Origin: Octopus bimaculoides
Lineage: Eukaryota
Length of the DNA stretch: 64,000 nt
Direction of reading: 5' to 3'
NCBI RefSeq assembly: GCF_001194135.2
Contig: NC_068982.1
Span: forward strand, 806,102 to 870,101
In this document: piece after piece, positions 3,747-61,652 of the stretch
Layout of the letters: each line of letters starts with the position of its first letter
Position numbering within the stretch: position 1 is the first letter of the stretch
The notes under the pieces: model-generated
Seen by the model: the letters and a program-made list of their open reading frames with translations, nothing else
What the model was told of the DNA's origin: nothing
The model's database searches: none
Position numbers and translations under genes: made by a program

Positions 3747-6738
3747 ATTTGTATATTACAATCGTTCCTACCCACCCCTCTCCCACATGTTCGTATCTAT
3801 AAATCTTACGTAATTCTGAGTTCTCTCTGTACGTTCTCTGTGCTGCAGTTGGTCCTCCTTCATGTATTCCTATGCCTCTGCTTCCAAGTTAAAACAGTGT
3901 GACCCGCCTTATTGATTCATTGTATATTTAACTTTGTAAAACGACCAACATCAACAGGAAATTGGCTGCTGGATCTGCAGCAAACCAAAAGATAAAGAAA
4001 AAATAATTTTCTTAAGTTGGCGTAAAAATACACCAGATGTCACTTGAGAACCGATCATATCTCTGCAATAAGCCTCTTCATCCTTCAGTTATGATATATC
4101 TATGTGATAAGAAAATCTCTATCTACTTTGATATAAAATGTTTTAATTAATTCCATTTTGTTTTTGTATACTTCTTATACACCAGATGTTTCCCCAGGTG
4201 TAGTTAAGCCAGATTTTGATTATTAAATTATTTTACAACGATAACATTATACAACTAAAATAAAATGCAACATGTTATCTGTTCAGATTATAACTGATGC
4301 TAAGAAAATCAACAAACTTGTTTTAAAGTAACATGCTTTCTATTAGAAGTTGAGTAAAACACGTCGAAATACTAACCTGAAATATTCCGTCATGTAATTA
4401 TATAATATTTTAGAGATTTAAAAGATAAATACATTAGTTATGTTTTGTATCACTTTCGTAATCTAAATTTATACGGCTAATATTTTTATCTGTATCATAG
4501 TGTGTATGTGAGAGTAAAATGTAAGCTAATAGGGACCTAGATTTTCGCTAAATTTCAATTGCTTGTTGCAGTCGTATTTATTACATTCACACTAGTTTTG
4601 TTTTTTTAAAGCTATGTACATCACAAATTTCCTTCTCCAATAAAATCGAAACCGTCTAATTGCCCAACAAATAAACAGATCGATTCAGATATGAATATTA
4701 CAAGAAGAAAACTGAAATCTTGAATATATTTTCTGTATAGACTTGTACTTGTAAATGTTTAATCCAACTTTATGGAATGGTAATCAACATTTGATTTTCT
4801 CGAGTTCTTGTAAATATTGTATTATGGGTTTTTTGATCTTGGATTTTAGCAATACAGTAAGTTCTTACCCGTATTCGGTTAATTATGAGCCAAAACTTTA
4901 CACGAGTGTCTCTGAGATATAAGTGTGTTTGATGTGTATGCTAAAGTCTGCATTTACACAGATGGGAACATTAATATATTGTTTCGATTATCGGTTCAGG
5001 TTTATGACAGTTATACACTTGGTTATTGAATGCAAAGTTGAAAAATGCTTAATTCATGATGCAGCAGCAGCAGCAGCAGCAGCAGCAGATTATGCAAATA
5101 ATATGGCTAACGCCAAATCTGTTAACTATAATATTTGGATATTAAGCAACTATTTAAACAAATCGATAAACAACACCGCCAACGACCCTCTTTCACATAT
5201 ATATTCTCAATCTGTCTTTCTCTCTCTCTTTGTGTGCGTGAATGTGTGTGTGTGTGAGTGTGTGTGTGTTTATTGTATTGGAATAAATTGCTTGATCCTG
5301 TTGCTAATTTAGTACAATTATTTTACTGGTGGAAGGAGGGGCGCGGTTGATTAGTCGAATCATTAGAGTGTAGGACCCATAAGTTGTACATATTTATTCT
5401 AATTACTTACAATTTGAGTTCAAATTCTGTGGAGGTTAACACGAGGTTTCATCCATCTGGAGTTTACAAAATAAGCGCCGATACTGATTCTTCTCTCTCT
5501 ATCTTCCTCGCCCCCCTCTCATAATTGGCAGCAGCACTGTGAGTAAACCTAGAAGACCAGTCATAGTATTGCTTTCGTTCAAAACAACCAATTTCATTTG
5601 ATTGCAGCGGAGGAGAATGGTCAGTGAGGCTTTGGTAAAGTATGATGATGAATAAAAGCTACAAATATTTATAACAAGGAACCGAGCTTTTGTTACCTTC
5701 TTGGTTCTTTTAGTGCTTACAAAGTCTACTGCGGTACTCGGAGTATGCAGGTATATTCCCGAGCTCCCTTCTTAACTATTTGGTTGGCTCCCAGGTCAGA
5801 TAAGCTAAGTTAATTTGAGTAGAGTTTTACAAGTTTATTGTTTGTGTAGTACATTCTACGATAGTCGTACATTCTCTCGATTCCCTGTAATTCAGACAGC
5901 TTCATGGTCCCAGCAGACAAAATGGAAAAGGCGTCGCCCCAGAGAATAGCTAGAGAGATGCACCACAACAGCCACTCTGCCTCGATTGCGGTATCCGGGG
6001 GCCGAGAACACCGGAAGTCTAAACTTATGACAACAATATTGTTTTTAATTAAAGGTTCTTTTGATGATTGTACAACTCTTTGGCTATAAATAGGTCTGTA
6101 AATATTTAATGAAGGTGATGACAACAAGGAGGGTGGTCTGTATCGATATACCTCATGACTCGCATCTTCTGGTTTTGTGTTTAGCGATATTTCTTCTATG
6201 TCTACCATATTTCGGTCAGAAAATAAGCGGAAGTCCACAAAATCCTCATCATTTGAAGAGCTGTAATTGTTCCTCTTAAAATTGGCCTTCGGCTAATCGT
6301 TAAGCAGTCTTATTTAAACTCCTCCACCCCGTCAAATATTGACTGTGATGCAGGGGGCCCACAGGGGAGGGAGGCACACAGGAAGGATGCAAATCATACA
6401 TGTGCACTACGTGTTCGAGCAATCTCAGTATTCCTATGAATACTTCTGGTGTTGTATACAGTGAAGCTTTACTATAGCGTCGTATATTATCGACTGCTAC
6501 TTACCAGTAAATATTGGTGCATTGTTGTACCGTTATCTTTTTTATACTTTAACCTGATGGTACTTTGTTTTACTGGGAAGCAATGCTACTCTACACACAC
6601 ACATATATATATATATAACCCACACCCCACCCTTGCTTCCATCACCCTCACATCCCCACACACCTACACATGCACACATTAAGGTCACCAACCCCTATCC
6701 ACACGCACATACAGTTGTAAATTCCAACTATATATATA

Positions 6739-6965
6739 NNNNNNNNNNNNNNNNNNNNNNNNNNNNNNNNNNNNNNNNNNNNNNNNNNNNNNNNNNNNNN
6801 NNNNNNNNNNNNNNNNNNNNNNNNNNNNNNNNNNNNNNNNNNNNNNNNNNNNNNNNNNNNNNNNNNNNNNNNNNNNNNNNNNNNNNNNNNNNNNNNNNNN
6901 NNNNNNNNNNNNNNNNNNNNNNNNNNNNNNNNNNNNNNNNNNNNNNNNNNNNNNNNNNNNNNNNN
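6739..6965. other. Assembly gap (others: 8580-9229, 17605-17969, 20185-20486, 34892-35675, 39135-39152, 43662-43711, 58439-59355)
   Basis: Runs of N, almost all bounded by (TA)n, (CA)n or (CACG)n tracts. Confidence 0.99.
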
Positions 6966-7016
<51 letters not shown>

Positions 7017-9229
7017 CACATACATTCATTCATACACACACGTATACATTTGTATACATATATTTCTCTTTGTGTACGCATGCGTGTGTTTTCAAAATGC
7101 AAACGACGTTTGAAAACATAAATTTCCGATCCTTTGATATGATGTTCTTGAAACAACTCACGAAATCGATTATTCATTGAACAGAAAACTGATCTTTTCA
7201 AAGTTATGATAGTGTTTTATTATTTTTTTTTAGTGTTTTGCTAAGTTGTTAATGAGCATGTCGACTGTCAGCGAATTGCATCAATGATTCCTTAGTAGTT
7301 GTTAATAATACAATAACACCAGATTCCCATTATTGTATCTAAATGTCTTTTTGTAGTCTAATCATTCAAAGTTATATGTTCAGGCTTATAAGTGTTTTCT
7401 CAGTAATACTAGATGCAATCTTGTGATTGCCACTTAAGCTTTGGTACAGCGCTCCGAATCTAGTTAGCTTCACTACTCATATCCTCTCTACGAAATACAG
7501 TGTGCAAACAGCAACCTCCTTAGTGTAATCGTTCTATCTTTAAAGTAGCAGTTAATTATATACTTCATACTTATCGTTTAGATCATCGTTATCTATTACT
7601 AGCAATTATATAAGAACGAAAACAATATATATTTCTTGAGTGAACAGTTACTCAACAGGATATTTCATGAAATGCCGTCCAAGAACTAATTCCAATACTA
7701 ATTGGATGCGATGATAACATTTCTTATATTTTTTTTTATATAATTAAGTTAGAAACAAAGCATTTCCGTTGTGTCTTTAAATGACTTGATTTCCCGGGAT
7801 CTTATCTCTAACAGCACAAAAGGAAAACGATTAAACAGAGTTCACCACGTAAATTTCAATATATCAAATACATAACTGAAACAAACAGAAAGACGATTAT
7901 AAGATTTGCGACACTGAAATATGAACTAAGGATATCAGACAGTCTTTCAAGGAAACTTGATTTAGTGTTTGCAATATAAAACTATTACTTACAAATGGAC
8001 ACTTAAATTTTCTACTGGAGATTTCTGGTGCAAGTTTCCTGTGATGACAAATCGTTTAGCCGAAAGAAGAAACGGAAAAGAGAGTTGACTTCATTTTGTC
8101 TTGCTTCGAATAAATGATATTACGTAGAAAAGAAACAGGTAATGTCTGTTGACTTCCTGTTGTCCTGGCTTAAGTCAAATTCATTACATATCAACACATT
8201 TAAATTCAGAATACAGCAGCATTGCTAGTAGTGTTTTAAATAAAACACAGCTGAAAACTCTCAACGAATCAGGTAAATATTATTCAATAAGGAAACATAA
8301 CATTCCATCATATATTTCTGTACAGAATATAGGAGGAGCACAAAAGTTCTAACCTTTATTGAGTCACAAAACCCGTTAAGCTGTACATAACGTGCACCGC
8401 ATGGTTAAATGAGAAACCTCTTCGTAAATTTAAAATGAACCGTATTCATTCGAAAGTCTGTCGACGTAAAATAAGCAATATTAACAATACACACACACTT
8501 ATACACACACACTTATACACACACGCACACGCACACGCACGCACACGCACACGCACGCACACGCACGCACACGCACGCANNNNNNNNNNNNNNNNNNNNN
8601 NNNNNNNNNNNNNNNNNNNNNNNNNNNNNNNNNNNNNNNNNNNNNNNNNNNNNNNNNNNNNNNNNNNNNNNNNNNNNNNNNNNNNNNNNNNNNNNNNNNN
8701 NNNNNNNNNNNNNNNNNNNNNNNNNNNNNNNNNNNNNNNNNNNNNNNNNNNNNNNNNNNNNNNNNNNNNNNNNNNNNNNNNNNNNNNNNNNNNNNNNNNN
8801 NNNNNNNNNNNNNNNNNNNNNNNNNNNNNNNNNNNNNNNNNNNNNNNNNNNNNNNNNNNNNNNNNNNNNNNNNNNNNNNNNNNNNNNNNNNNNNNNNNNN
8901 NNNNNNNNNNNNNNNNNNNNNNNNNNNNNNNNNNNNNNNNNNNNNNNNNNNNNNNNNNNNNNNNNNNNNNNNNNNNNNNNNNNNNNNNNNNNNNNNNNNN
9001 NNNNNNNNNNNNNNNNNNNNNNNNNNNNNNNNNNNNNNNNNNNNNNNNNNNNNNNNNNNNNNNNNNNNNNNNNNNNNNNNNNNNNNNNNNNNNNNNNNNN
9101 NNNNNNNNNNNNNNNNNNNNNNNNNNNNNNNNNNNNNNNNNNNNNNNNNNNNNNNNNNNNNNNNNNNNNNNNNNNNNNNNNNNNNNNNNNNNNNNNNNNN
9201 NNNNNNNNNNNNNNNNNNNNNNNNNNNNN

Positions 9230-9600
9230 GAGAGATGTGATTACTACGAAGAGGATAGAACATTGGATTGGCTACAATGCAAAGGGCCATGGAAAGATCC
9301 GTGCTTGGATTATCATGACGAGAATCGATTCGAAATGAGATAATTCGAGAATGGAGCGGAGTGAACGATGTGACCGTTTAGAATACCAAAATCACAAGTT
9401 CCACTGGGTGAGACATGTTGCAAGGTTTACAGACAACAAATGGAACCGTGCAGTTGCTGAGTGGTTCCCAAGAGATTGGTAAAGGTTTCTTGGAAGGCCT
9501 CCACGACCATGGGAAGATGATTTAGTCAAGCAATTTGGGGCGCAATCCAGACAGAATTGTAAGTGCATTGTGACCAGTGGTGTACAATAGAATCTGTTGG
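9230..9600 (+). mobile_element. RTE-clade LINE 3' fragment (decayed ORF2 C-terminus)
   Basis: Translates with breaks to RLATMQRAMERSVLGLS..IRNEIIREWSGV..KFHWVRHVARFTDNKWNRAVAEWFPRDW*RFLGRPPRPWEDDL, matching the RTE W.GHVAR..D.RW...V.EW.P...KR..GRP..RW.DD motif. Confidence 0.85.
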
Positions 9601-10116: not shown

Positions 10117-11339
10117 TATTATTATTTTTTTTAGTTTAGTTGTCGAAGTTCTTTCGTCCCACGTTCTGTAATCTCTTCAACGACTTTCTGTTCCACGTGT
10201 CTCTTCTTATCTTGCCTTTTCTTTCATTACTCTATGGTGCACTTTCATTATTCTAGGCTGCGCATTGTTTTCTTGTTTATGCACATAACGTCTTCTTGTC
10301 AGTTTATGGACATCATTCTCTCTAAGTGTCTTCTTTTCGCTTCTTTCATTTTGCTTTGTTTCTATCCTCTTCCTCTTCTTCTTGCTTTTCTTTTCTTTCC
10401 CTATCCATATGAATTTTCTCAGTAAACCTCGTTAGTCAGCAGATTATGCCTTAAATTATTCTCTTTATATTATAATTATCAGAATCTTCATGAAGATATG
10501 CTAATATTCTACTGATTTTGGCAATATGTTTTCGGAACACTTTTGTTGTCATGTTTAACTGTAAGAACAGCAAACCCTAAATTTCTAGTAATGTAGTAAA
10601 ATAAAGGGTTTTAGAGCAGCGCCGGCGGATGTATTGGAACATTTCTGATAGAGTCAAATGTCATGTTTAGCGCCGACCATCTGCAGTATTTGAGTAAATT
10701 TTGCCATAACTGGCTTTTGTTGGCAAGGTTGCTAGACTTAATGAGTTCTTATGGATAATTAATACCTTAAACTGTGCTTACGTTTACGAACCTCCACCCC
10801 TGTCCACCTCTCTAGATTGACAGGCTGAAAATACACCCATTCTAAATTTCATAAACGTAGGTAAATTTGTTTAGACATTTCACTTGTTGATGATTTGTTA
10901 ATTAATCAAGTCACTAATCACTCGTTGATTTGGTGTCCAGATGAATTGGGAGCTTTGTAACATATCACGCAATCTAATAGCATTATGCTTTTGTCACAAT
11001 AAACATTCCTAATGCAACAATAATAGCAATACCAGATAATCCATTCGTCTATGTATATGTTTATGTATGTATAATATATGAAATTTTATATATATATATA
11101 TAAAAGAATGCTATAGATTTGTATTGAGTCCTGCAATTTATCATTTCTCGTGAATCAATATATATATATATATATATATATATACACTGAGAAAAAAGAG
11201 GCTGTCAGAATTATTAGTGTTTCCGTTCGTTATGCAAACTCTACAAGACAAAAATTAAAAACAAAATGATACAAACAGAACGTTTCCTTGTTCTTTTATG
11301 GGAATCAGATGTGAATCATGATTGCAAAAAATACGTCGT

Positions 11340-11632
11340 TAAAAAGTGGAAACACTTGCTCGATGATTGCTTTATCTTTTGGGAGAGATCAAATGAGGAC
11401 CTACAAATATTTAATGACATAGTCAACACACTTCACTCATCCATCAAATTCACGACAGAAACCAATTGCAATGAATTACCATTCCTGGATATTCACATAA
11501 AAATACACAACTCTACAATCACAACACATATTTTACAAACAAAAACGGACACGCACCAATATGTGGATTTCTGCTCTTGCCATCTCTCACACTTCAAAAG
11601 ATTCATCCCATTCAGCATGGCAAGATGTATTT

Positions 11633-11637
<5 letters not shown>
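11340..11637 (+). mobile_element. Penelope-like element reverse transcriptase fragment
   Basis: WKHLLDDCFIFW...LQIFNDIVNTLHSSIKFTTE..NELPFLDIHI...TDTHQYVDFCSCH..HFKRFIPFSMA matches the PLE RT pattern RYxDD...IKFTxE...LPFLD...TDTHQYL..S.HP.H.K..IP.S.A. Confidence 0.85.
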
Positions 11638-11727
<90 letters not shown>

Positions 11728-16999: not shown

Positions 17000-17558
17000 A
17001 GAGGAGATAGAGAAACACAATGGGAGAAGCAGGAGGGAAAGCGAAAAGGATAGAGTGAGAATTGCGATGCAGTGTCAACGAAATTCGCATACAACAGTCC
17101 GTCGTCATCCTAGTCTGACACTGTTAGAATTTGCACACTTTCATGCCACAAGCTAAACACAGCCAACTATTAATATCACAGTGGATAAAATGTCTTCAAA
17201 CAACATCTGTTTTAATAATAACCATTGCCGAGCTTGACATCAAAGCAGACTAACGATCAATATATTGGGCCATGTGTTATCAAACAATAGTAAAGCTTGT
17301 AAGTAAATATATAGAAAGATTTTCAGCAAATACTCTACAGCATTGTAAATAAGTGATACTAAATGTTACTAATTTTTCTGGCTCCAGTATTCTCCATAAG
17401 AATTCATAGGCCAAACAAGGATTTTCTTCTTTCAAGTTGTCACAGAATGTGTAGGCTTCGATGATTTGTTATTCGAGGCCAACCATTAGAGATCGAGGTT
17501 GATTTAAAAGAAAAGAAAATATGCATAATATAGAAGTAAATACAGAATGCCATAACTG

Positions 17559-17604
<46 letters not shown>

Positions 17605-17969
17605 NNNNNNNNNNNNNNNNNNNNNNNNNNNNNNNNNNNNNNNNNNNNNNNNNNNNNNNNNNNNNNNNNNNNNNNNNNNNNNNNNNNNNNNNNNNNNNNN
17701 NNNNNNNNNNNNNNNNNNNNNNNNNNNNNNNNNNNNNNNNNNNNNNNNNNNNNNNNNNNNNNNNNNNNNNNNNNNNNNNNNNNNNNNNNNNNNNNNNNNN
17801 NNNNNNNNNNNNNNNNNNNNNNNNNNNNNNNNNNNNNNNNNNNNNNNNNNNNNNNNNNNNNNNNNNNNNNNNNNNNNNNNNNNNNNNNNNNNNNNNNNNN
17901 NNNNNNNNNNNNNNNNNNNNNNNNNNNNNNNNNNNNNNNNNNNNNNNNNNNNNNNNNNNNNNNNNNNNN

Positions 17970-25909: not shown

Positions 25910-26115
25910 GACCGCTTCCTGTTGGCCTTCCGGGCGAAATGCTTAGCGGTATTTCATCTGCCTTTACGTTCTGAGTTCAGATTCCGCCGAGGTCGACTTT
26001 GCCTTTCAACCTTTCGGGGGTCGATAAATTAGGTACCAATCCCGTACTGGAGTCGATATAACTGACTAGCCCCCTTCCCCAAAAGTTGGGGCCTTGTGCC
26101 TAGAGTAGAAAAGAA
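25910..26115 (+). mobile_element. SINE family 2 (tRNA-headed)
   Basis: ccgggcgaaatgcttagcggtattt..gagttcagattccgccgaggtcgactttgcctttc..ggggtcgataaattaggtacc, homologous to copies at 27200, 44440, 49115, 61434 and 61663. Confidence 0.85.
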
Positions 26116-26237
26116 TATACATTTAATTCCGTCCCGGCGGCAAAATGCTTAACATTTCTTTCGACTTTACATTCTGAGTTCAAATTCCACCGAGGTCGAC
26201 GTTGCCTTTCAACCCATCGGGGTTCGATAAAATATGT

Positions 26238-26380
26238 ACTACATTATTTACAATTGATGGATATTTGTTCTCATCTTGTTTGTTGTAAACATAACGTTTC
26301 GGCTGATATACCCTCCAGCCTTCATCAGGTGTCTTGGGGAAATTTCGAACCTGGGTTCTCATTCCTAAGGTATTTTTTGA

Positions 26381-26424
<44 letters not shown>

Positions 26425-26526
26425 GTAGTAGTAGTATTATTATTAGTATTAGTATTCAGGTTACTGCCTGGAATCGAACTCGGAATATTGGAGTTAGTAG
26501 CCCGTGCTCTTAACCACTACGCTATA
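26238..26526 (-). mobile_element. tRNA-headed SINE with hammerhead-ribozyme tail (family 4), copy A
   Basis: Minus strand: A box (tagcgtagtgg), B box (gagttcgattcc), (AAT)n spacer, then tail ...GACAC CTGATGA A GGCTG..CAGCC GAAACGTT... Confidence 0.85.
26288..26333 (-). ncRNA. Minimal type I hammerhead ribozyme (best-preserved copy)
   Basis: GACAC-CUGAUGA-A-GGCUG(loop)CAGCC-GAAA-CGUU-AUGUU: intact core, 5-bp stem II, ACGU palindromic stem III, GUU site. One mismatch at the base of stem I. Confidence 0.8.
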
Positions 26527-26671
26527 ATAATAATAATAACATCGAAAAATACCTTAGGAATGAGAACCCAAATTCGAAATTTCCCCAAGACACCTGATGA
26601 AGGCTGGAGGGTATATCAGCCGAAACTTTGTGTTAACAACAAACAAGATGAGTACAAATATCTCTTAACTG
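26527..26671 (+). mobile_element. Inverted duplicate of the family 4 tail (hammerhead 26589-26634, ACGU>ACUU)
   Basis: Near-perfect reverse complement of 26255-26400. Confidence 0.9.
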
Positions 26672-27199
26672 TAAAATATGTCCTAGTTGAGCACTGGGGT
26701 CGATGTAATCGACTTAATCACTGCCCCCAAATTGCTGTCCTTGTGCAAATATTTGAAACCAACATATATTTAATTCCGAATTACATTAATAGAGTCATAT
26801 ATTTTCACCCCCCCCCCGCCCACACACAGAAACGAACTTTTCGGCGTACGCACTTTATTGATTTTATTATCGTAAAGATTTTATTTTGAGAAATTTTAAT
26901 TAAGAGAGGGTAAAATAATTAAGTTCGTTCCGTTCAGATAAATAGCCAAATTAATTCTGTTGGTGTTTTTACTTAATCACTCATAATGAAGGAGATCAGT
27001 TAAGGTTATCTGTTTAACTTGAAATCTAAAATTGGCTTTGTTATATCTTTATAGGTCATATATTTTCCAACTCCAGCGTTGTGTGAAACCTAATAGATGT
27101 GTGCATGTGCATCTATCTATCCATCCATCCATCTATCTAAATTCAATTTGGTTATATTCTAGAAAATATTGGTTTCAATTGCAGCGTTGGCACAAAACT

Positions 27200-27377
27200 A
27201 GCAAGCTCGGGGGAGGGGTAAGCGGATCATATCGACCCCAATACTCAACCTGTACTTATTCTATCGACCCTGAACGGGTGAAAGGCGAAGTCAGTCTCGG
27301 TGGAATTCGAACTCAGGACGGACAAAACGCTGCTAAGCATATTTCCCAGCATGCTAGCCATTCTATCAGCTCGCCGT
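27200..27377 (-). mobile_element. SINE family 2
   Basis: Reverse complement of the family 2 consensus (tcgacccc..tacttattctatcgaccc..aaaggcgaagtc..gaattcgaactcag..ccagc..tcgcc). Confidence 0.8.
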
Positions 27378-29527: not shown

Positions 29528-29790
29528 CATATAACCGGCACTCCGTCGGCTACTACGACGAGTGTTCTAGTTGATTCGATCAACGGAGGAGCTGCTCGTT
29601 ATATTAACGTGAAAGTAGCTGAAAGCTCCACAGACATGCATACCCTTAACGGAGTTCTCAAAAAGATTCAGCGTGACACAGAATTTTACAAGACTGGACC
29701 TTTGAACTTATTTTTGCCAGCTCAGTGGACTGGAGCAACGTGAAATAAAGTGTCTTGCTCAAGGACACAAGATGCCACTGGAAATCGGAT
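29528..29790 (-). mobile_element. SINE family 3 (tRNA head, conserved gtgtccttgagcaagacacttt core, tail ending gacggagtgcc)
   Basis: Core matches 37700-37780 and 48700-48750; tail matches 44700-44817. Confidence 0.8.
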
Positions 29791-34891: not shown

Positions 34892-35699
34892 NNNNNNNNN
34901 NNNNNNNNNNNNNNNNNNNNNNNNNNNNNNNNNNNNNNNNNNNNNNNNNNNNNNNNNNNNNNNNNNNNNNNNNNNNNNNNNNNNNNNNNNNNNNNNNNNN
35001 NNNNNNNNNNNNNNNNNNNNNNNNNNNNNNNNNNNNNNNNNNNNNNNNNNNNNNNNNNNNNNNNNNNNNNNNNNNNNNNNNNNNNNNNNNNNNNNNNNNN
35101 NNNNNNNNNNNNNNNNNNNNNNNNNNNNNNNNNNNNNNNNNNNNNNNNNNNNNNNNNNNNNNNNNNNNNNNNNNNNNNNNNNNNNNNNNNNNNNNNNNNN
35201 NNNNNNNNNNNNNNNNNNNNNNNNNNNNNNNNNNNNNNNNNNNNNNNNNNNNNNNNNNNNNNNNNNNNNNNNNNNNNNNNNNNNNNNNNNNNNNNNNNNN
35301 NNNNNNNNNNNNNNNNNNNNNNNNNNNNNNNNNNNNNNNNNNNNNNNNNNNNNNNNNNNNNNNNNNNNNNNNNNNNNNNNNNNNNNNNNNNNNNNNNNNN
35401 NNNNNNNNNNNNNNNNNNNNNNNNNNNNNNNNNNNNNNNNNNNNNNNNNNNNNNNNNNNNNNNNNNNNNNNNNNNNNNNNNNNNNNNNNNNNNNNNNNNN
35501 NNNNNNNNNNNNNNNNNNNNNNNNNNNNNNNNNNNNNNNNNNNNNNNNNNNNNNNNNNNNNNNNNNNNNNNNNNNNNNNNNNNNNNNNNNNNNNNNNNNN
35601 NNNNNNNNNNNNNNNNNNNNNNNNNNNNNNNNNNNNNNNNNNNNNNNNNNNNNNNNNNNNNNNNNNNNNNNNNNNTATATATATATATATATATATATT

Positions 35700-37633: not shown

Positions 37634-37857
37634 GGGTGGCTTAGTGGTTAAGATATTGGACTAATGATGGTAAAATTGTGGTTTCGATTCCTGCAACGGG
37701 TGACACGTTATGTTCTTGATCAAAACACTTCATTTCACGTTTGCTCCAGTCCATTCAGCTGGCAAAAATGAGTGATCTTGCGACGGACCGGCGTCCCAAC
37801 CAGGTGCAGAATACATACACCAGGAAATCGGGAAACCGGCCCTTGTGAATCGGCATG

Positions 37858-44439: not shown

Positions 44440-44690
44440 AAAGGATGAAAGCTAAAGTTGACCTTGACAGAATTTGAACTCAGCACGTCAAGACGGACGA
44501 AACGCCGTTCAGCATTTTGTCCGGCGTGCCAACGCTTCTGCCAGCTTATCGCCTGTTAATGAAATATTGGTCTTAAATTTTGGTACAAGGTCAGCTGTTT
44601 CGAGGGAGGGGATGAATCAGTTATATCCACCCCCAGTGGTGGTACTTATTTTATCGACCTTGGAAGGATGAAAGGTAAAGTTGACCTCGG
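44440..44690 (-). mobile_element. SINE family 2 fragments
   Basis: aaggatgaaagctaaagttgacc..gaatttgaactcag..gccagctt, plus a second tail at 44575-44690. Confidence 0.7.
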
Positions 44691-46985: not shown

Positions 46986-47703
46986 ATTTGACTGCTTACT
47001 TACGAATGTACCTGTGTATGTATATTCTGGGACTGGTATCTGCGGCATTGGGGTACCTCTACCTTCTACGTGTATTTCTGAAATACCTATAGTACAAGCA
47101 TGAAACATACTGAAATTCTATGAGATGTCCGTTGTACTTGAGCAAAAAGTACTTGATATTCTTCCAAGACAAATGTACATTCAATCGCAAGACGGAGCGT
47201 TTGAATTTTTGTAGACACCTCTCGAAAATTCTAATGTACAACCGGGCGATACCAAATGGTTAACCTATATAAGTTTTGCCAACCATTATCGGTTTTTGTT
47301 GGCTTATAATGCATTTTTTTTATTTCGTCAATCCAATTTTGTTCTACACTTTCTTACAGCACTGTATATAATATTTTATGTGTGTTTTCCCATCACCCAC
47401 CCTTATTGTTCAAGCCATTATTGTTTTATCTAAATTTTTATCTTTATAATCACCAATACATTCTATCACCAGTGTTCTCTATAGATTAGTAAGTTTTATG
47501 CAGGTATATGTATGTTAGTATGTACAGCTTTACATGTATGAATGTATGGGGATATAGACGTATGGGTACGTACGCGTGTGTGTAGGCATTTATGTCTATC
47601 TGAATATAAATATAACCACTGTATTCGAAACAGAAACAACCAACACTGTTTTGTCGTTTGCTTTGGTACCTATGTGATAAGTGGCTTCATTTATAATCTA
47701 ATT

Positions 47704-47875
47704 CAGTTCTATATTCAAGAGATGAGGAATTATGTACATTATTTACATTTGGCGGATATTTGTCCTCATCTTGTTTGTTGTTAACACAACATTTCGCCTG
47801 ATCTACCCTCCAGCCTTCGTCAGGTGTCTTGGGGAAATTTCGAACCTGGGTTCTCATTCCTAAGGTATTTTTCGA

Positions 47876-47936
<61 letters not shown>

Positions 47937-48003
47937 ATCAATGCCTGGAATCGAACTCGGAATCTTGGGATTAGTAGCCTGAGCTCTTAACCACTACGCC
48001 ATA
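47704..48003 (-). mobile_element. tRNA-headed hammerhead SINE (family 4), copy B
   Basis: A box tggcgtagtgg, B box gagttcgattcc, (AAT)n, tail with hammerhead at 47783-47828, ending agaactg. Confidence 0.85.
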
Positions 48004-48165
48004 ATACCTTAGGAACGAGGACCCAGGTTCAAAATTTCCCCAAGACACCTGATGAAGGATGGAGGGTATATCAGCCGGAACGTTGTGTTAACAACAAACA
48101 AGATGACAAATATCCGTCAAATGTAAATAATGTACATAATTTCACATCTCTTAAATATAGAACTG
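48004..48165 (+). mobile_element. Inverted duplicate of the family 4 tail (hammerhead 48044-48089, GAAA>GGAA)
   Basis: Reverse complement of 47704-47870. Confidence 0.9.
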
Positions 48166-48243
48166 TATTATCTAATCGGTACGGAGCCAACATTAGACTT
48201 CAATGGAGACATATAGAGAAACTCCATCAAACAGTAGCTGCGC

Positions 48244-48645
48244 ACGGGCATATGGCGTAGTGGTTAACAGCGCGGGCTACTAATCCCAAGATTCCGAGTT
48301 CGATTCCAGGCAGTATCGTGAATAATAATAATAATGGTAATAATAAATTTGTCAATATACTTCATTTTGGTTAATATATAAAGGATTGAGGTAAATCCTC
48401 CTGAAGATATAGAGTCAAAATTAAAAGAAGAGTGCTATTGTTATCTAGTGAACGATATTTCGACATCTTGTGTGTCTTCAACTGGTTCAAAAAATAAATT
48501 TATCAATCTACTTCATTTTGGTTAATATAGAAAGGATTGAAGACACACAAAATGAAGGCTGGAGGGTAGATCAGCCGAAACGTTGTGTTAACAACAAACA
48601 AGATGAGGACAAATATCCGTCAAATGTAAATAATGTAAATAATCT
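48244..48645 (+). mobile_element. Rearranged family 4 copy C (head 48244-48345, tail 48552-48645)
   Basis: A box 48253-48263, B box 48296-48307, (AAT)n. The tail resumes at ATGAAGGCTGG..CAGCCGAAACGTTGTGTT. Confidence 0.75.
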
Positions 48646-48659
48646 AATTATATAATAGT

Positions 48660-48760
48660 AATAAATCGTAAGTTTGCGAGTTCGACGCCCGTCGGCGCGT
48701 TGTGTTCTTGAGCAAGACACTTTATCTCACGCTGTTCCAGTCCACTCAGCTTCACTGGCG
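48660..48760 (+). mobile_element. SINE family 3 fragment
   Basis: gagttcgacgccc..gtgttcttgagcaagacactttatctcacgctgttccagtccactcagct. Confidence 0.75.
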
Positions 48761-49114: not shown

Positions 49115-49300
49115 GGCGGCGAGTTGGCAGAATTCGTTAGCACACCGGCCAAAATTGCTGGGCATTTCATCCGTCTGTGTGTTCCAAGATCAAATTCTGC
49201 TGTGGTCGACTTTGCCTTTCAGAATCAGTACAAACAAATACCAGTTAAACAATGGGGTCGATGTAATCGACCAGCACCCTCACCCGTAAAAACCGGTCTT
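49115..49300 (+). mobile_element. SINE family 2
   Basis: ggcggcgagttggcagaattcgttagcacaccggcc..gtcgactttgcctttc..tggggtcgatgtaatcgac. Confidence 0.85.
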
Positions 49301-52800: not shown

Positions 52801-54895
52801 TGAAGCGGTTGGTAGAATCTACATATGCATTGATATCACATCTCAGAGCAAAGAGATGGGGAATTTAGAGTGTGTACTAGAAAGTAGAGTATCTGAGAGA
52901 TGAACAATGATACATTTTCCATAGCTGTGAGAATTAAGATGTGCGACATGCGTGCAAGTAACTGATGATGTATTCCACATTGGACCGATGCCCACATGTT
53001 GAAATAGATATATGCAAACATATGAAAATGAGAAAAGGTCGCAAGATAGCAAGCTAAGATATCTGGTTACATATGCAAATAAGAAAAGAAAATTGTAAAA
53101 TGGCATTCTTAGATATCTCGTTACACCTTGGCAACTTATGTTAAATATTAAAGCCTCTCGACGCAGAAATCCCAAACTTTATATTCTGTTTCTCATGGAA
53201 ACATTGCGATATATATCTGGAAGGATATCAGTTGAACTTCAACCACATATAACACAGGATAATCTAATCTAATTATATGCCTTCATATTGTTATATGCTC
53301 AACGATAGGCTGTAAATTATGAGAATTCATGGTTTTAATTATCAACGTAGATTTCCGTCTTCTTAATGCAACTGGTCAGAAGGTATAATTTTTGGTAAGT
53401 GAAAACAAAGAGAAACTCAACTTCAATTCTATCCAAAACTAGAGGCACGAATATACCGAACGTTATCTTTTTTTTTTTTACAAATAATTTGTATATTTAT
53501 ATATAATTTGTGTATTTAAATTACGAAGATTACACTGCAGTATTATAATGGTAAAATCAATGGTCAAAAATATAATGTCTCACAACATTTTGGGGCTATT
53601 TTAAACTTTTTATAAAGGCAATGCAGAGGAATATTAGCTGATAAGAAATAGATGAGACCGTTGAACATATTTCCTTACAGAAGCAAATCTTGACACAAAT
53701 AAAGTACAAAATAAAGCAATGTCAGAAGCGTATGTTTTATGAAAGAAGTATTTTCCTGTGAAATCAACAACAAGATGAAGGTACAAAATCTTTAGAAGAT
53801 CGAATAACACGAAAACATTAGTGAAACAGGACCGTTAATTCAAGACTTTACTTTCAGAAAGAATAATGGTCGCTCAGAAAAATAATGTCTTAAATACAAA
53901 GATGAATCCGTATAGTTTAATCGATATACGGGTAAAACCCCCACCCACTATAAAATAACTGGACAGAAATATTAGATACCCAATAAATTTGTTTAACTCT
54001 CCCGTTTTAATATCGAATTAGATTGGTTAGCTTACATGATTATAATTGACTTAAAAACAAATTTAGTAACTGAAAATAAGAATGTAACTTAGTTCTAAGA
54101 TAACAAGCCCTTATAGCTTGCTTACACTTTCAAGGATATGTTCCAAAATAAACATGTGCGATTGATACTTTAAATTTCTTTTGACAAAGACAAGATCTAG
54201 AAAGAAATGGAAGAGAGAATAGATTTGCTGTCTATTTTATGAATCGCCATTATCTCAAGTAGAACGCAGAGTCATCAAATGACCGTTTATAAAGACAGGA
54301 AGCTCTTGCAACTAGTTGAGGATTTAAGATCGAACTGCAAAACTAACGCCAGTATCCCTTTCAGAAAAAGGTCTAACCACTTACAACCACCTTGAGCTGA
54401 CCATAACTTTCCAAGCGAATCTCTGAAAGAGCAGTTACAGGCCTGTTGTATTGATTCAGTTCACGAGCAACAAGTGCAGTTCGTCGTCTTTCAGCTCGAC
54501 ATTCACTCTTCTTATCTAACAGAGTACGAACATTCCAATATGAAATATTCATCTTTCATCCCAATTTTGTATTTTCTCCAGAGAAAAACCGTATTAGAAT
54601 ATTTAGATCCGGTTTGACCCAATTGAACATAGATTAAGCCATCACTTCACTTGGTGTCTTCAGCTAGCCAGATATAAATGAATTAACTTAGTTCGCTTCG
54701 AGCCATGCTGAAGGACCCCGAATGAAGGAGCACAGAGGATTATGCTGGGTTGCATGCGTAACTGTACATATTCTATGTACCAGAAACACGTGTCGGTCAT
54801 TGTAACAAAATAATTATTCTGCACGACCAACTAAAATTAAAAGGAAAAACTGTTGATGATGTACCTGCCTCCGTATTTTTTATAATGGTTTGAAG

Positions 54896-58438: not shown

Positions 58439-59917
58439 NNNNNNNNNNNNNNNNNNNNNNNNNNNNNNNNNNNNNNNNNNNNNNNNNNNNNNNNNNNNNN
58501 NNNNNNNNNNNNNNNNNNNNNNNNNNNNNNNNNNNNNNNNNNNNNNNNNNNNNNNNNNNNNNNNNNNNNNNNNNNNNNNNNNNNNNNNNNNNNNNNNNNN
58601 NNNNNNNNNNNNNNNNNNNNNNNNNNNNNNNNNNNNNNNNNNNNNNNNNNNNNNNNNNNNNNNNNNNNNNNNNNNNNNNNNNNNNNNNNNNNNNNNNNNN
58701 NNNNNNNNNNNNNNNNNNNNNNNNNNNNNNNNNNNNNNNNNNNNNNNNNNNNNNNNNNNNNNNNNNNNNNNNNNNNNNNNNNNNNNNNNNNNNNNNNNNN
58801 NNNNNNNNNNNNNNNNNNNNNNNNNNNNNNNNNNNNNNNNNNNNNNNNNNNNNNNNNNNNNNNNNNNNNNNNNNNNNNNNNNNNNNNNNNNNNNNNNNNN
58901 NNNNNNNNNNNNNNNNNNNNNNNNNNNNNNNNNNNNNNNNNNNNNNNNNNNNNNNNNNNNNNNNNNNNNNNNNNNNNNNNNNNNNNNNNNNNNNNNNNNN
59001 NNNNNNNNNNNNNNNNNNNNNNNNNNNNNNNNNNNNNNNNNNNNNNNNNNNNNNNNNNNNNNNNNNNNNNNNNNNNNNNNNNNNNNNNNNNNNNNNNNNN
59101 NNNNNNNNNNNNNNNNNNNNNNNNNNNNNNNNNNNNNNNNNNNNNNNNNNNNNNNNNNNNNNNNNNNNNNNNNNNNNNNNNNNNNNNNNNNNNNNNNNNN
59201 NNNNNNNNNNNNNNNNNNNNNNNNNNNNNNNNNNNNNNNNNNNNNNNNNNNNNNNNNNNNNNNNNNNNNNNNNNNNNNNNNNNNNNNNNNNNNNNNNNNN
59301 NNNNNNNNNNNNNNNNNNNNNNNNNNNNNNNNNNNNNNNNNNNNNNNNNNNNNNNTATATATATATATATATATCAAAATAGGCAACAAGGATATTCAGA
59401 GGTAATGCAGTACGATCGTTTCATGCAGCTCTATTTAATTGAACAATACAATCATTGCATCAATTTAAAATGCAGAGCAATCCTCAGCTGCACAAAGACA
59501 TAGAATTTAATTAAACTAGAACAGATGGACACATTAGTATAATTATACCTAAAATCTCCACGAAGTTAAGGAGATAGACAAAGAACATGTTGCCTCTACT
59601 ACAGCATATAAGTTACGTATAGATTTCCAGTACTTATAGATTTCAGTATCTTATACTGTATATTGTTTCGCTTTCATGTTGTTACTTATGTTGGCCTTTG
59701 AGCATTTTGGCATGTATGTGCGCAATTCGCTTAACATAGACTATCTTTCGGCAAACCAGTCGGATTCTGCTGGTAAATTGACTGAAAGAAAGCAAATTTA
59801 GAATGCTTCTTCCATGTGTTACCAAAGATTGTCTGTAACTGTCAGACATAGGATAAATGCCAAATCTCTTGGTTTTGCAGAGTGAGCTACCAATGAAGTC
59901 ATTAATAGTACATTATT

Positions 59918-61433: not shown

Positions 61434-61652
61434 GGCAGCGACCTGGCAGAATTGTTAACACGCCGGGCAACAACGCTTGGCAGTATTTCTTCCGTGTTTA
61501 TGTTCTAAGTTTAAACGCCACCGAGGTCGACTTTACTTTCATCTTTTTCTGGGTCGATAAAATAAGTGCCAGTTGAAACGCTGGAGTTGGTGTAATCGGA
61601 TTAACCCCCCCCCCCCACACAACTTGCTGGCCTTGTACCAAAATTTGAAAGC
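61434..61652 (+). mobile_element. SINE family 2 (tail subtype ..ccttgtaccaaaatttgaaa)
   Basis: ggcagcgacctggcagaa..cgccgggc..ccgaggtcgacttt..gggtcgataaaataagt. Confidence 0.85.

What the first reader, a model, noticed from the sequence alone, without database searches (positions are those of the whole stretch)
26238..26671. tRNA-headed SINE ending in a type I hammerhead ribozyme, inserted with an inverted copy of its own tail
Seen: the element consists of a Pol III head (A box TGGCGTAGTGG, B box GAGTTCGATTCC, anticodon-like arm GGG-CTACTAA-(T/C)CC resembling tRNA-Ser(GCT)), an (AAT)n spacer and a ~170-bp tail. The five tail copies (26288-26333 -, 26589-26634 +, 47783-47828 -, 48044-48089 +, 48552-48589 +) give the consensus GACAC-CUGAUGA-A-GGCUG(loop)CAGCC-GAAA-CGUU/GUGUU. 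This has stem I GACAC:GUGUU, a full catalytic core with an extra A after A9, a 5-bp stem II, a palindromic ACGU stem III and a GUU cleavage triplet. Each copy is damaged at different positions, so the consensus is intact. At both main loci the minus-strand SINE is abutted at its 5' end by an inverted copy of the tail. Established: minimal type I hammerheads with palindromic stem III and inverted terminal copies characterise Penelope-like elements, and schistosome Sm-alpha repeats are a precedent for a tRNA-related hammerhead repeat. Inference: a Pol III-transcribed, self-cleaving, PLE-mobilised SINE (retrozyme-like, possibly making circular RNA) in a cephalopod. I cannot confirm whether it has been described.
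Basis: partly seen in the sequence, partly recalled or inferred. Interest (0 to 1): 0.88.

Follow-up and report, generated by a model that had tools for sequence, protein, structure and literature searches.

The report
SINE with Penelope-type hammerhead tail
This is a short, non-coding mobile element with a tRNA-like promoter head and a tail whose consensus encodes the minimal hammerhead ribozyme typical of Penelope-like retrotransposons, and its insertion pattern suggests it borrows that family's enzymes rather than a LINE's, a partnership I did not find described.

Summary
The window holds three tRNA-like heads, each followed by (AAT)n and a ~145-nt tail, plus two extra tail copies. Each extra copy is 5'-truncated, inverted, and abuts the 5' end of a full element. 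All five hammerhead coordinates are exact.

The consensus forms a complete minimal type I hammerhead. The "extra A" after A9 is a published hallmark of Penelope-like element (PLE) minimal hammerheads, not an anomaly. My descriptor found no match in 40 Mb of random sequence. It found one motif just 3' of a PLE reading frame in two of six unrelated contigs encoding PLE proteins. No single copy in the window is intact, and Rfam detects no hammerhead.

Each hairpin unit is flanked by a probable 10-12 bp target-site duplication, so each looks like one insertion event. One unit also carries a 31-nt terminal extension. This is the published PLE insertion architecture. A PLE fragment lies in the window at 11.3 kb.

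Not supported:
- A retrozyme or circular-RNA life cycle. There is no tandem array, and copy ends do not coincide with the cleavage site.
- The tRNA-Ser origin.
- The cephalopod origin, which I could not check.

No partner PLE with the same 3' end was found, and no further copies could be obtained. I judge this a new variant of a known kind, of moderate to high interest.

The parts
26228..26239 (.). Left copy of the probable target-site duplication at locus 1 (TAAAATATGTAC), part of the host repeat 'SINE-B'
   Evidence: Other SINE-B copies are uninterrupted here (GATAAAATAAGTA|CCAGTTGA). This 12-mer recurs at 26672-26683 with 11/12 identity.
26240..26384 (-). Tail T1 of the full-length element at locus 1. 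Its hammerhead-like motif lies at 26288-26333 and is the least damaged copy (only the 1.1-2.1 pair is mismatched).
26385..26455 (-). Internal (AAT)n / (TAG)n microsatellite between head and tail
26456..26525 (-). tRNA-like head H1, with box A TAGCGTAGTGG and box B GAGTTCGATTCC
   Evidence: Rfam tRNA model gives only 15 bits, E=4.7.
26526..26671 (+). Inverted, 5'-truncated arm T2. It starts with 12 nt of (ATA)n, and the tail runs from 26538. Its hammerhead-like motif lies at 26589-26634, with helix III broken (ACUU). The 3' boundary is ambiguous between 26671 and 26682.
26672..26683 (.). Right copy of the probable target-site duplication at locus 1 (TAAAATATGTCC)
   Evidence: It matches the left copy at 11/12 positions, but the element's own 3' end at only 8/11.
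47693..47702 (.). ATAATCTAAT, left flank of the locus 2 hairpin unit (probable target-site duplication)
   Evidence: 4 matches in the window against 1.18 expected, and 3 of them lie at unit boundaries.
47704..47734 (-). 31-nt extension beyond the tail end, left arm
   Evidence: (inverted repeat I4). It is 90% identical to 48135-48165 in inverted orientation and occurs nowhere else in the window.
47735..47879 (-). Tail T3 of the full-length element at locus 2, with its hammerhead-like motif at 47783-47828
47880..47932 (-). Internal (AAT)n microsatellite
47933..48002 (-). tRNA-like head H2
48004..48134 (+). Inverted, 5'-truncated arm T4 with its hammerhead-like motif at 48044-48089. A13 is changed to G and one helix II pair is broken.
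48135..48165 (+). 31-nt extension beyond the tail end, right arm
48167..48176 (.). ATTATCTAAT, right flank of the locus 2 hairpin unit and left flank of the third unit
48252..48321 (+). tRNA-like head H3 of the third, variant copy
48322..48542 (+). (AAT)n followed by a 196-bp variant middle. This stretch replaces the 5' half of the tail and contains a 47-bp direct repeat and an 18-nt inverted match.
48543..48637 (+). Tail T5, 3' part only. The core CUGAUGA is replaced by AAAAUGA.
48639..48648 (.). Third copy of ATAATCTAAT, directly after T5
11266..11646 (+). Degraded fragment of a Penelope-like element reverse transcriptase. It shows that PLEs exist in this genome. It is not shown to be the partner of the SINE.
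   Evidence: 3648 homologues, best E=2e-32. [quoted passage not shown]

Best explanation
This is a family of tRNA-related SINEs whose 3' module derives from the terminal region (pLTR / 3' UTR) of a Penelope-like element and still encodes, in the family consensus, that element's minimal type I hammerhead.

Proposed mechanism:
1. An internal A/B-box promoter drives Pol III transcription of head-(AAU)n-tail. This step is inferred.
2. The PLE-derived tail is recognised in trans by a PLE reverse transcriptase / GIY-YIG endonuclease. This step is inferred.
3. The endonuclease nicks both target strands 10-12 bp apart. Both 3'-OH ends prime cDNA synthesis at the 3' end of SINE RNA.
4. One cDNA reaches the 5' end of the RNA and the other stops early. 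The two are joined head to head.

The result is what is seen: a full element, an inverted 5'-truncated tail at its 5' end, the tail 3' ends facing outward, and one target-site duplication around the whole unit. The structure is shown; the mechanism is inferred.

The hammerhead has a 4-nt palindromic helix III (ACGU) with no loop, so it could be active only as a dimer with a second copy. The SINE ends are not defined by its cleavage site. It is therefore most likely a module inherited from the partner PLE. It may serve in recognition, or in occasional trans/dimer processing. It does not appear to drive a circular-RNA cycle.
For: Anatomy. There are 3 heads, 5 tails, and 3 of 3 heads linked to a tail. 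The A/B-box arrangement occurs 3 times against 0.03 expected.

Hammerhead consensus. It has the core CUGAUGA...GAAA, a 5-bp helix I, a 6-bp helix II starting with G10.1-C11.1, an unpaired A between positions 9 and 10.1, a palindromic 15.2-16.2 and U17. There are 0 matches in 40 Mb of random sequence. These are exactly the features Cervera & de la Pena 2014 report for metazoan PLE minimal hammerheads. They also report a 4-5 bp helix I, a large helix II, and pairs of motifs 100-700 bp apart on opposite strands (PMC4209133).

Positive controls. The descriptor in a looser form (shorter stems, U3-A8 core allowed) finds one motif just 3' of a PLE reading frame in two unrelated contigs and nowhere else in them: L003 11649-11687 and L004 2429-2467.

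Insertion architecture. Craig et al. 2021 describe PLE insertions as having an inverted 5'-truncated copy adjacent to the 5' end, a 30-40 bp terminal extension and a variable-length target-site duplication (PMC8557442). Here two of three units have the inverted arm meeting the exact 5' terminus of the SINE. Locus 1 lies inside another repeat whose other copies supply the empty site. It is flanked by TAAAATATGTAC / TAAAATATGTCC. Locus 2 is flanked by ATAATCTAAT / ATTATCTAAT and has a 31-nt extension on both arms.

PLEs in this genome. A reverse transcriptase fragment lies at 11266-11646.

Not an artefact. The arms differ by 8-10%.
Against: - No autonomous PLE sharing the tail was found. The only PLE piece in the window lacks its 3' end, and the nearest PLE contigs I could fetch carry no copy of the SINE.
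- There are only five tail copies, none with an intact motif. The substitution rate in the hammerhead is about 4%, against about 5.5% in the rest of the tail (counted). This shows no extra conservation, although none is expected in dead copies.
- Rfam hammerhead models give no hit even at E<=10.
- Similarity of the head to tRNA is weak (15 bits; none for H2 or H3). The head also starts only 1-3 nt before box A.
- At locus 1 the right copy of the target-site duplication resembles the tail's own 3' end (8/11), so that boundary is not fully certain. The locus 2 repeats are short and AT-rich.
- In the full tail, the predicted fold pairs the 3' strand of helix I locally instead.
- PLE minimal hammerheads have low activity in vitro (PMC4209133).
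Confidence: 0.6

Rival explanations
1. This is an ordinary LINE-dependent tRNA-SINE. On this reading the hammerhead-like stretch is an inert relic or a coincidental part of a LINE-derived tail, and the hairpin units arose from two separate insertions or from twin priming by a LINE enzyme.
For: The tail ends in an AT-rich, loosely repetitive stretch (AAATGTAAATAATGTA). That is compatible with the 3' ends of some stringent-type LINE/SINE pairs. No PLE partner was found. Octopus-type genomes are reported to be rich in LINE-driven SINEs (PMC8967140).
Against: The motif carries PLE-specific features that a descriptor does not require, and it is not expected by chance (PMC4209133). Twin priming inverts an upstream part of the same RNA and does not duplicate the 3' tail. 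Here both arms end with the tail's 3' end facing outward. The same junction, with the arm meeting the exact 5' terminus of the SINE, occurs at two loci. Each of those units lies within one probable target-site duplication, with none around the inner parts.
Confidence: 0.17
2. This is a retrozyme-like element. Tandem or dimeric transcripts self-cleave at the hammerhead, the monomers are ligated into circular RNA, and the circles serve as templates for reverse transcription.
For: Type I hammerheads in animal non-LTR retrozymes are linked to PLEs (PMC7229834; bioRxiv 10.64898/2026.07.22.740005). The palindromic helix III demands two copies.
Against: There is no head-to-tail tandem arrangement in the window. 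There is one hammerhead per unit. Copies have fixed 5' ends (AT[G/A]GCGTAGTGG) and fixed 3' ends (AATGTA) that do not coincide with the cleavage site, and all keep the ~53 nt downstream of it. In a hairpin unit the second motif lies on the opposite strand, so a single transcript carries one sense copy and one antisense copy.
Confidence: 0.06
3. The SINE depends on a PLE and its hammerhead is catalytically required. For example, pairing in trans with the hammerhead of PLE or other SINE transcripts could process RNAs or bring the SINE RNA to the PLE ribonucleoprotein.
For: The family consensus, which approximates the master copy, keeps every core nucleotide and all three helices, although single copies decay freely. 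Hammerheads are described as universally present in canonical PLE clades (PMC8557442).
Against: There is no functional data. PLE minimal hammerheads cleave poorly in vitro. Naiad PLEs proliferate without hammerheads, and hammerheads may simply parasitise PLEs (PMC8557442). The family looks young (about 5% from consensus), so an intact consensus need not reflect selection.
Confidence: 0.12
4. The hammerhead resemblance in a repeat consensus is due to chance.
For: No genomic copy is intact and Rfam is silent.
Against: There are 0 descriptor matches in 40 Mb of random sequence. The motif also has the bulged nucleotide, G10.1-C11.1 and the palindromic helix III. An independent PLE-type insertion architecture occurs at the same loci.
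Confidence: 0.02

Closest known systems
Minimal type I hammerheads (min-HHR) in the pLTRs of metazoan Penelope-like elements (Cervera & de la Pena 2014, PMC4209133; Lunse, Weinberg & Breaker 2017, known to me only as cited in PMC6765202, not read)
   Same: Same core. Helix I of 4-5 bp with no defined loop 1. A long helix II that starts with G10.1-C11.1. [quoted passage not shown] A loop-less palindromic helix III that requires a dimer. Solitary copies dispersed in the genome, and pairs 100-700 bp apart on opposite strands.
   Different: Here the motif is not in a pLTR flanking a reverse transcriptase / endonuclease reading frame, and it is not simply a truncated PLE. It sits in the tail of a ~290-nt unit that has its own tRNA-like A/B-box head. 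No sequence similarity was found to the PLE 3' regions I could fetch.
Sm-alpha / Sj-alpha SINE-like retroposons of schistosomes (Ferbeyre et al. 1998 and Laha et al. 2000, as summarised in PMC2770079 and PMC6765202)
   Same: A tRNA-derived, Pol III-type short retroposon carrying a type I hammerhead. So the general kind, a SINE with a hammerhead, is already known.
   Different: Sm-alpha carries a canonical hammerhead with loops that is active in vitro. It is often tandemly arranged, with cleavage liberating monomers, and its head is tRNA-Gln-like. The element here has the PLE minimal form, is dispersed rather than tandem, has copy ends unrelated to the cleavage site, and shows PLE-type inverted-arm insertions. 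It comes from a different host, probably a mollusc.
Animal non-LTR retrozymes (Cervera & de la Pena 2020, PMC7229834; Li, Clavereau & Pollet 2026, bioRxiv 10.64898/2026.07.22.740005)
   Same: Non-coding elements carrying a type I hammerhead and thought to depend on PLE enzymes.
   Different: Retrozymes are head-to-tail tandem repeats that are expressed as circular RNAs, and they have no Pol III head. None of these features is seen here.
Insertion architecture of Penelope-like elements (Evgen'ev & Arkhipova 2005, as cited; Craig et al. 2021, PMC8557442)
   Same: An inverted 5'-truncated copy directly at the 5' end, inverted repeats framing the unit, a 30-40 bp terminal extension, a target-site duplication of variable length, and association with microsatellites.
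   Different: The inserted unit is a ~290-nt SINE, not a 3-4 kb PLE. No partial direct tandem (pLTR) is evident, unless T4 followed by the third copy at 48004-48637 is read that way.
Classical tRNA-derived SINE with a LINE-derived tail
   Same: Modular build of a head with an internal Pol III promoter, a body and a partner-derived 3' tail. Short, non-coding, and flanked by target-site duplications.
   Different: The tail carries a PLE-type ribozyme motif rather than a LINE 3' end or poly(A). There are inverted-arm insertions. The head starts only 1-3 nt before box A.

Membership tests
Hammerhead ribozyme, type I, PLE minimal variant (min-HHR) | Catalytic core C3-U4-G5-A6-N7-G8-A9 and G12-A13-A14, with A15.1-U16.1 and H17 not G | tested here: met
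   Met by the five-copy consensus (CUGAUGA ... GAAA CG U U). In single copies the core is intact in T1, T2 and T3 (T3 has U7 changed to C, a free position). It is broken in T4 (A13 changed to G) and T5.
Hammerhead ribozyme, type I, PLE minimal variant (min-HHR) | Open helix I formed by the sequences flanking the core (4-6 bp), and a closed helix II | tested here: met
   Helix I is GACAC:GUGUU, 5 bp including one G.U pair. Helix II is GGCUGG:UCAGCC, 6 bp including one G.U pair. In the full tail, the predicted fold keeps helix II but pairs GUGUU locally instead.
Hammerhead ribozyme, type I, PLE minimal variant (min-HHR) | Features reported as specific to metazoan PLE minimal hammerheads: an unpaired nucleotide between 9 and 10.1, G10.1-C11.1, and palindromic 15.2-16.2 with no or a tiny loop 3 | tested here: met
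   All three are present in the consensus: A bulge, G-C, ACGU. The definition is taken from PMC4209133.
Hammerhead ribozyme, type I, PLE minimal variant (min-HHR) | Match to a curated hammerhead covariance model | tested here: not met
   No Rfam hammerhead family matches at gathering score or at E<=10. I did not see an Rfam family for the loop-less PLE variant, so this counts weakly.
Hammerhead ribozyme, type I, PLE minimal variant (min-HHR) | Covariation that supports the helices | tested here: inconclusive
   There are only five near-identical copies. All differences are single private changes that break pairs, and none is compensatory.
Hammerhead ribozyme, type I, PLE minimal variant (min-HHR) | Site-specific self-cleavage after H17 | not testable with these tools
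   This needs in vitro transcription of consensus monomers and dimers. The energy of a double-hammerhead pairing (-22.3 kcal/mol) is close to that of two monomers (-24.0 kcal/mol), which settles nothing.
SINE (tRNA-derived) | Internal Pol III promoter: box A (TRGCNNAGTGG) and box B (GGTTCGANNCC) at tRNA-like spacing | tested here: met
   The boxes are TGGCGTAGTGG and (G)AGTTCGATTCC. The pattern AGTGG-N25-45-GTTCRANNCC occurs 3 times, against 0.03 expected, and only in the heads.
SINE (tRNA-derived) | Recognisable homology of the head to a tRNA | tested here: inconclusive
The Rfam tRNA model gives 15 bits (E=4.7) for H1 only, and ARAGORN finds none. The 5' acceptor strand is absent. The variable loop and T arm look tRNA-Arg-like to me, but that is recall, not a test.
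SINE (tRNA-derived) | Short, non-coding, dispersed multi-copy, with target-site duplications | tested here: met
   The units are about 290 nt. There are three units at two places 21 kb apart. Probable target-site duplications are 12 bp (locus 1) and 10 bp (locus 2). The genome-wide copy number is unknown.
SINE (tRNA-derived) | A 3' tail shared with an autonomous partner retrotransposon | tested here: inconclusive
   No element with the same tail occurs in the window, in 47 kb of fetched contigs, six of which encode PLE proteins, or in the viral, metagenome and prokaryote collections. The host genome itself could not be searched.
Non-autonomous element dependent on a Penelope-like element | PLE-type insertion: an inverted 5'-truncated copy at the 5' end, within one target-site duplication | tested here: met
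   Seen at locus 1 (26228-26683) and locus 2 (47693-48176). The definition is taken from PMC8557442.
Non-autonomous element dependent on a Penelope-like element | A 30-40 bp extension at an end of the insertion unit | tested here: met
   Locus 2 has a 31-nt extension on both arms (47704-47734 and 48135-48165), unique in the window. Locus 1 has none.
Non-autonomous element dependent on a Penelope-like element | PLEs present in the same genome | tested here: met
   A reverse transcriptase fragment lies at 11266-11646. Its homologues carry RVT_1 and GIY-YIG domains.
Animal non-LTR retrozyme | Head-to-tail tandem repeats, each unit carrying a hammerhead | tested here: not met
   No tandem arrangement of the unit exists in the window.
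Animal non-LTR retrozyme | Unit boundaries or circular RNA defined by the cleavage site | tested here: not met
   Copy ends are fixed at AT[G/A]GCG... and ...AATGTA. The cleavage site lies ~53 nt inside the 3' end, and the sequence beyond it is retained in all copies. Whether circular RNA exists cannot be tested here.

The most novel reading that the evidence does not exclude
A genuine Pol III-driven, tRNA-headed SINE family that parasitises Penelope-like elements rather than LINEs. On this reading it captured a pLTR-derived tail, ribozyme included. It integrates by PLE-style priming from both nicked target strands, which produces hairpin-shaped insertions. It may account for part of the large 'unclassified SINE' fraction reported for octopus genomes. 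It would then be the first clear PLE counterpart of the LINE-SINE partnership. It would also be a compact natural substrate for dissecting PLE integration and the role of the minimal hammerhead.
Probability: 0.45. Interest if true: 0.72.

Novelty: new variant of a known kind. Interest (0 to 1): 0.6.

Why it matters
How PLEs integrate is still poorly understood. That includes their tandem and inverted structures, their terminal extensions, and what their universally present hammerheads do. No in vitro system exists (PMC8557442).

A ~290-nt element that reproduces the PLE insertion signature and carries the PLE ribozyme would be a far more tractable reporter than a 3-4 kb PLE. It would also extend the SINE concept to a second class of autonomous partner.

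It would help explain the thousands of solitary minimal hammerheads seen in animal genomes, which have been attributed to truncated PLEs (PMC4209133). Repeat annotators would also know to check unclassified SINEs for PLE tails. The hairpin-shaped insertions can form ~135-bp double-stranded RNA if transcribed, which may matter for small-RNA pathways.

Tried and rejected
Curated models. Rfam at gathering score and at E<=10 gave no hammerhead. The only matches were long-hairpin miRNA models, scoring far below their thresholds because of the inverted arms. ARAGORN found no tRNA.

Harvesting more copies:
- The exact-pattern scan GAAGGNTGGAGGGTANATCAGNC of viral, metagenome and prokaryote collections gave 0 hits.
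- A protein search with the reading frames that run through the SINE gave no candidate, so this route yielded no host DNA.
- A protein search with the window's PLE fragment gave one weak Logan hit.

Looking for the partner PLE:
- An exhaustive HMMER search confirmed that the fragment is from a PLE.
- A word-index search with the best hit returned mostly bivalve or unnamed proteins.
- Seven contigs were fetched (L001-L007). None contains the head, the tail or the host repeat. They are not from a close relative of the source genome and served only as positive controls for the descriptor.

Other tests:
- Whether the two arms of a hairpin are closer to each other than to other copies: they are not. 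All copies are star-like, at about 5% from the consensus. This neither supports nor contradicts a common origin.
- Whole-tail folding shows no unusual stability (z = -0.75).
- A literature search for strings of the element's sequence gave no paper.
- Searches for PLE-dependent tRNA-SINEs or for hammerheads in cephalopods found nothing specific.
- Lunse et al. 2017 and Ferbeyre et al. 1998 are not held in the library.

Considered and rejected:
- Assembly artefact, because the arms differ by 8-10%.
- Twin priming, because the tail is duplicated rather than merely inverted.
- DNA-level palindromic duplication, because at locus 1 the arms end at the element's own 3' end and are flanked by a direct repeat.
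Full report
WHAT IS THERE

Reading the two regions, a BLAST of the element against the window, alignments, nhmmer profiles and exact string look-ups all agree.

The window holds three copies of a ~70-nt head. They lie at 26456-26525 (-), 47933-48002 (-) and 48252-48321 (+). Each is followed on its own strand by an (AAT)n run and a tail. The full tail is ~145 nt (T1 26240-26384, T3 47735-47879). The third copy keeps only the 3' 95 nt of the tail (T5 48543-48637), behind a 196-bp unrelated stretch.

Two further tail copies, T2 (26538-26671) and T4 (48004-48134), lie on the opposite strand. Each directly abuts the 5' end of a full element. Both are 5'-truncated: T2 begins within (AAT)n, and T4 begins at ATACCTTAGG.

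No other head or tail exists in the 64 kb, so all three heads are linked to a tail.

THE HEAD

Two heads carry TGGCGTAGTGG, which matches the box A consensus TRGCNNAGTGG; H1 has TAGCGTAGTGG. All three carry (G)AGTTCGATTCC, which matches box B with one mismatch. The pattern AGTGG-N25-45-GTTCRANNCC occurs three times in the window, against 0.03 expected, and only in these heads.

Similarity to a whole tRNA is weak. The Rfam tRNA model gives 15 bits for H1 and nothing for H2 or H3, and ARAGORN finds no tRNA.

All three heads begin 1-3 nt upstream of box A, at AT[G/A]GCGTAGTGG. The 5' acceptor strand is therefore missing, and the 5' terminus looks fixed rather than randomly truncated. 'tRNA-related Pol III head' is a fair description. 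'tRNA-Ser(GCT)' is not established.

THE HAMMERHEAD

The consensus of the five copies reads GACAC CUGAUGA A GGCUGG AGGGUAUA UCAGCC GAAA CG U U | GUGUU. In standard numbering:
- Helix I is 5 bp (GACAC:GUGUU, one G.U pair).
- C3-A9 are intact.
- One unpaired A follows A9.
- Helix II is 6 bp and starts with G10.1-C11.1.
- G12-A14 are intact.
- A15.1-C15.2-G16.2-U16.1 form a loop-less palindrome.
- Position 17 is U.

I wrote a descriptor for this architecture. The consensus matches it and no single genomic copy does. In 40 Mb of first-order Markov sequence with the window's composition, even the loosest version (helices I and II of at least 4 bp) has no match. That puts the expectation below about 0.01 per window on both strands.

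A looser form of the descriptor (shorter stems, U3-A8 core allowed) also finds one motif just 3' of the reading frame in two of the six fetched contigs that encode PLE proteins, and nowhere else in them. These are L003 11649-11687, ~500 nt after the frame, and L004 2429-2467, 60 nt after the frame, with the published U3-A8 core variant.

The literature comparison is decisive for the type. Cervera & de la Pena 2014 (PMC4209133) define the minimal hammerhead of metazoan PLEs by exactly these traits:
- a longer helix II;
- a conserved G10.1-C11.1 pair;
- palindromic 15.2-16.2.

They also note solitary motifs spread through genomes, and pairs 100-700 bp apart on opposite strands.

Rfam's hammerhead models do not see the motif. 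That is unsurprising for a form without helix III, but it is recorded as a failed test.

Each copy is damaged differently:
- T1: an A.C mismatch at 1.1-2.1 only.
- T2: G16.2 changed to U.
- T3: one helix II pair broken, and C15.2 changed to U.
- T4: A13 changed to G, and one helix II pair broken.
- T5: C3-G5 replaced.

The substitution rate within the motif is about 4%, against about 5.5% in the rest of the tail. Inserted copies therefore decay neutrally. With five copies, covariation cannot be tested.

THE INSERTION UNITS

Locus 1 lies inside a copy of another abundant repeat, called 'SINE-B' here, with 8 copies in the window. Aligning those copies gives the uninterrupted sequence GATAAAATAAGTA|CCAGTTGA.

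At locus 1 the left flank ends ...TAAAATATGTAC (26228-26239). The right flank resumes TAAAATATGTCC-TAGTTGAG (26672-26683). This is a 12-bp direct duplication of the host sequence, identical at 11 of 12 positions, around the whole hairpin. There is no duplication around the full element alone.

One caveat applies. The target resembles the element's own 3' end (TAAATAATGTA, 8/11), so the exact right boundary is ambiguous by up to 11 nt. That resemblance may itself reflect microhomology at priming.

Locus 2 is flanked by ATAATCTAAT (47693-47702) and ATTATCTAAT (48167-48176). A third, exact copy follows T5 at 48639-48648. The 10-mer occurs four times in the window against 1.18 expected, and three of those sit at unit boundaries. 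The simplest reading is two successive insertions into the same target site.

Inside these repeats, both arms of locus 2 carry a 31-nt extension beyond the usual tail end (47704-47734 and 48135-48165). The two extensions are 90% complementary and occur nowhere else in the window.

The two arms of a unit are 90-92% identical. This excludes an assembly artefact and fits a single old event followed by independent decay. It does not prove a single event, because all copies are equally star-like.

HOW IT MOST LIKELY WORKS

In both hairpins the 3' ends of the tails face outward, and the inner junction joins a complete 5' end to a truncated one. This is what two cDNAs would produce if each was primed at the 3' end of SINE RNA from one of the two nicked target strands. 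The stagger between the nicks (10-12 bp) would give the duplication.

Craig et al. 2021 (PMC8557442) describe just this for PLEs: frequent 5' truncation, an inverted 5'-truncated copy adjacent to the 5' end, a 30-40 bp extension at an end of the unit, target-site duplications of variable length, and a bias towards microsatellites. They stress that these features are not seen in LINE target-primed reverse transcription.

Twin priming by a LINE would invert an upstream segment rather than duplicate the tail. Together with the PLE-type ribozyme, this makes mobilisation by a PLE reverse transcriptase / GIY-YIG endonuclease the best-supported mechanism. I give it about 0.6. It remains inferred.

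PLEs do occur in this genome. [quoted passage not shown]

WHAT THE RIBOZYME DOES

The evidence argues against a retrozyme-like cycle:
- Units are not tandem.
- Each unit has one motif.
- In a hairpin the second motif is on the other strand.
- Every copy retains the ~53 nt downstream of the predicted cleavage site.
- The 5' and 3' ends are fixed elsewhere.

The RNA that was copied was therefore uncleaved. With a loop-less ACGU helix III, the motif could act only as a dimer with another copy. A double-hammerhead pairing is energetically about equal to two monomers. In the full tail, the 3' strand of helix I is predicted to pair locally instead.

PLE minimal hammerheads cleave poorly in vitro, and some PLE clades thrive without them. 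I therefore regard the motif as a module inherited with the PLE-derived tail. It is intact in the master copy at the time of amplification, and its role is open: recognition, processing in trans, or none.

COMPARISON AND NOVELTY

Three things are already known:
- minimal hammerheads in PLE pLTRs, and dispersed as solitary copies (2014);
- SINE-like, tRNA-derived retroposons with a canonical hammerhead in schistosomes, Sm-alpha and Sj-alpha;

I did not find any description of a dispersed, tRNA-headed SINE whose tail carries the PLE minimal hammerhead and whose insertions show the PLE inverted-arm signature. I also found no mention of hammerheads in cephalopod or octopus repeats. A 2026 annotation of Octopus vulgaris lists 11.6% SINEs, mostly unclassified, and active Penelope families.

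The library is incomplete, and Repbase and Dfam could not be consulted. I rate this 'new variant of a known kind'.

LIMITS

- Only five tails and three heads were available.
- The host genome could not be searched. Scans of the viral, metagenome and prokaryote collections were empty. A protein search with the SINE-derived reading frames returned no candidate. The PLE-bearing contigs I fetched come from other organisms.
- The source organism is unverified. The closest named relatives of the PLE fragment are bivalve proteins, which fits a mollusc and no more.
- Transcription, cleavage and the partner element are all untested.

Noticed in passing
window 11266-11646 (+): A degraded fragment of a Penelope-like element reverse transcriptase, cut off on both sides by microsatellites. 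[quoted passage not shown] The closest named relatives are from bivalves.
   Followed up: yes
window 25933-26135, 26120-26239 + 26672-26790, 27252-27316, 44443-44690, 49145-49271, 61485-61567, 61679-61836: A second, more abundant SINE-like repeat ('SINE-B', core ...TTGCCTTTCA.CC.TTCGGGGTCGATAAAATAAGTACCAGTTGAAACACTGGGGTCGATGTAATCGAC...). One copy is the target of the locus 1 insertion and supplied the empty-site sequence.
   Followed up: partly
window 47693-47702, 48167-48176, 48639-48648 (also 53259-53268): Three copies of ATAATCTAAT (the middle one with one change) bracket the hairpin unit and the neighbouring variant copy. This suggests either two insertions into the same target or one complex event. 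The 75 bp at 48177-48251 between the middle repeat and head H3 is unique in the window.
   Followed up: partly
window 48322-48554: The third copy replaces the 5' half of the tail with a unique stretch. That stretch contains a 47-bp direct repeat (48342-48389 / 48493-48540, period 151) and an 18-nt inverted match (48464-48481 / 48537-48554). It is either a recombinant or a different subfamily.
   Followed up: partly
window 26296-26626 and 47783-48089: The inverted arms form ~135-bp hairpins. These score against long plant miRNA precursor models in Rfam (69-77 bits) but far below the gathering thresholds (211-230 bits). They are not miRNA genes, but they are potential sources of double-stranded RNA if transcribed.
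   Followed up: no
L003 11649-11687 and L004 2429-2467: Minimal hammerhead motifs lie 3' of PLE reading frames in contigs from other organisms. L003 has CTCC-CTGAAGA-ATCCA...TGGAT-GAAA-ACGT-T-C-GGAG. L004 has the U3-A8 core variant TTGAAAA with an AGCGCT helix III. They served as positive controls.
   Followed up: yes
window 48660-48760, 29719-29770, 37706-37760: A further tRNA-like repeat with a B-box-like GAGTTCGACGCC lies directly downstream of the third copy and has relatives elsewhere in the window.
   Followed up: no
window, several places (e.g. 6700-7000, 8580-9260, 17480-17900, 34900-35680, 58440-59360): There are 3313 N in runs flanked by (CA)n / (TA)n microsatellites. These are assembly gaps of a short-read scaffold, and complex inverted TE structures may be under-represented in such an assembly.
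   Followed up: no
tail consensus; window 26293-26279 (-), 26629-26643 (+): The 3' strand of helix I (GUGUU) can instead form a local hairpin, GUUGU-GUUA-ACAAC. This hairpin is favoured in the predicted fold of the whole tail and could compete with the hammerhead fold.
   Followed up: partly
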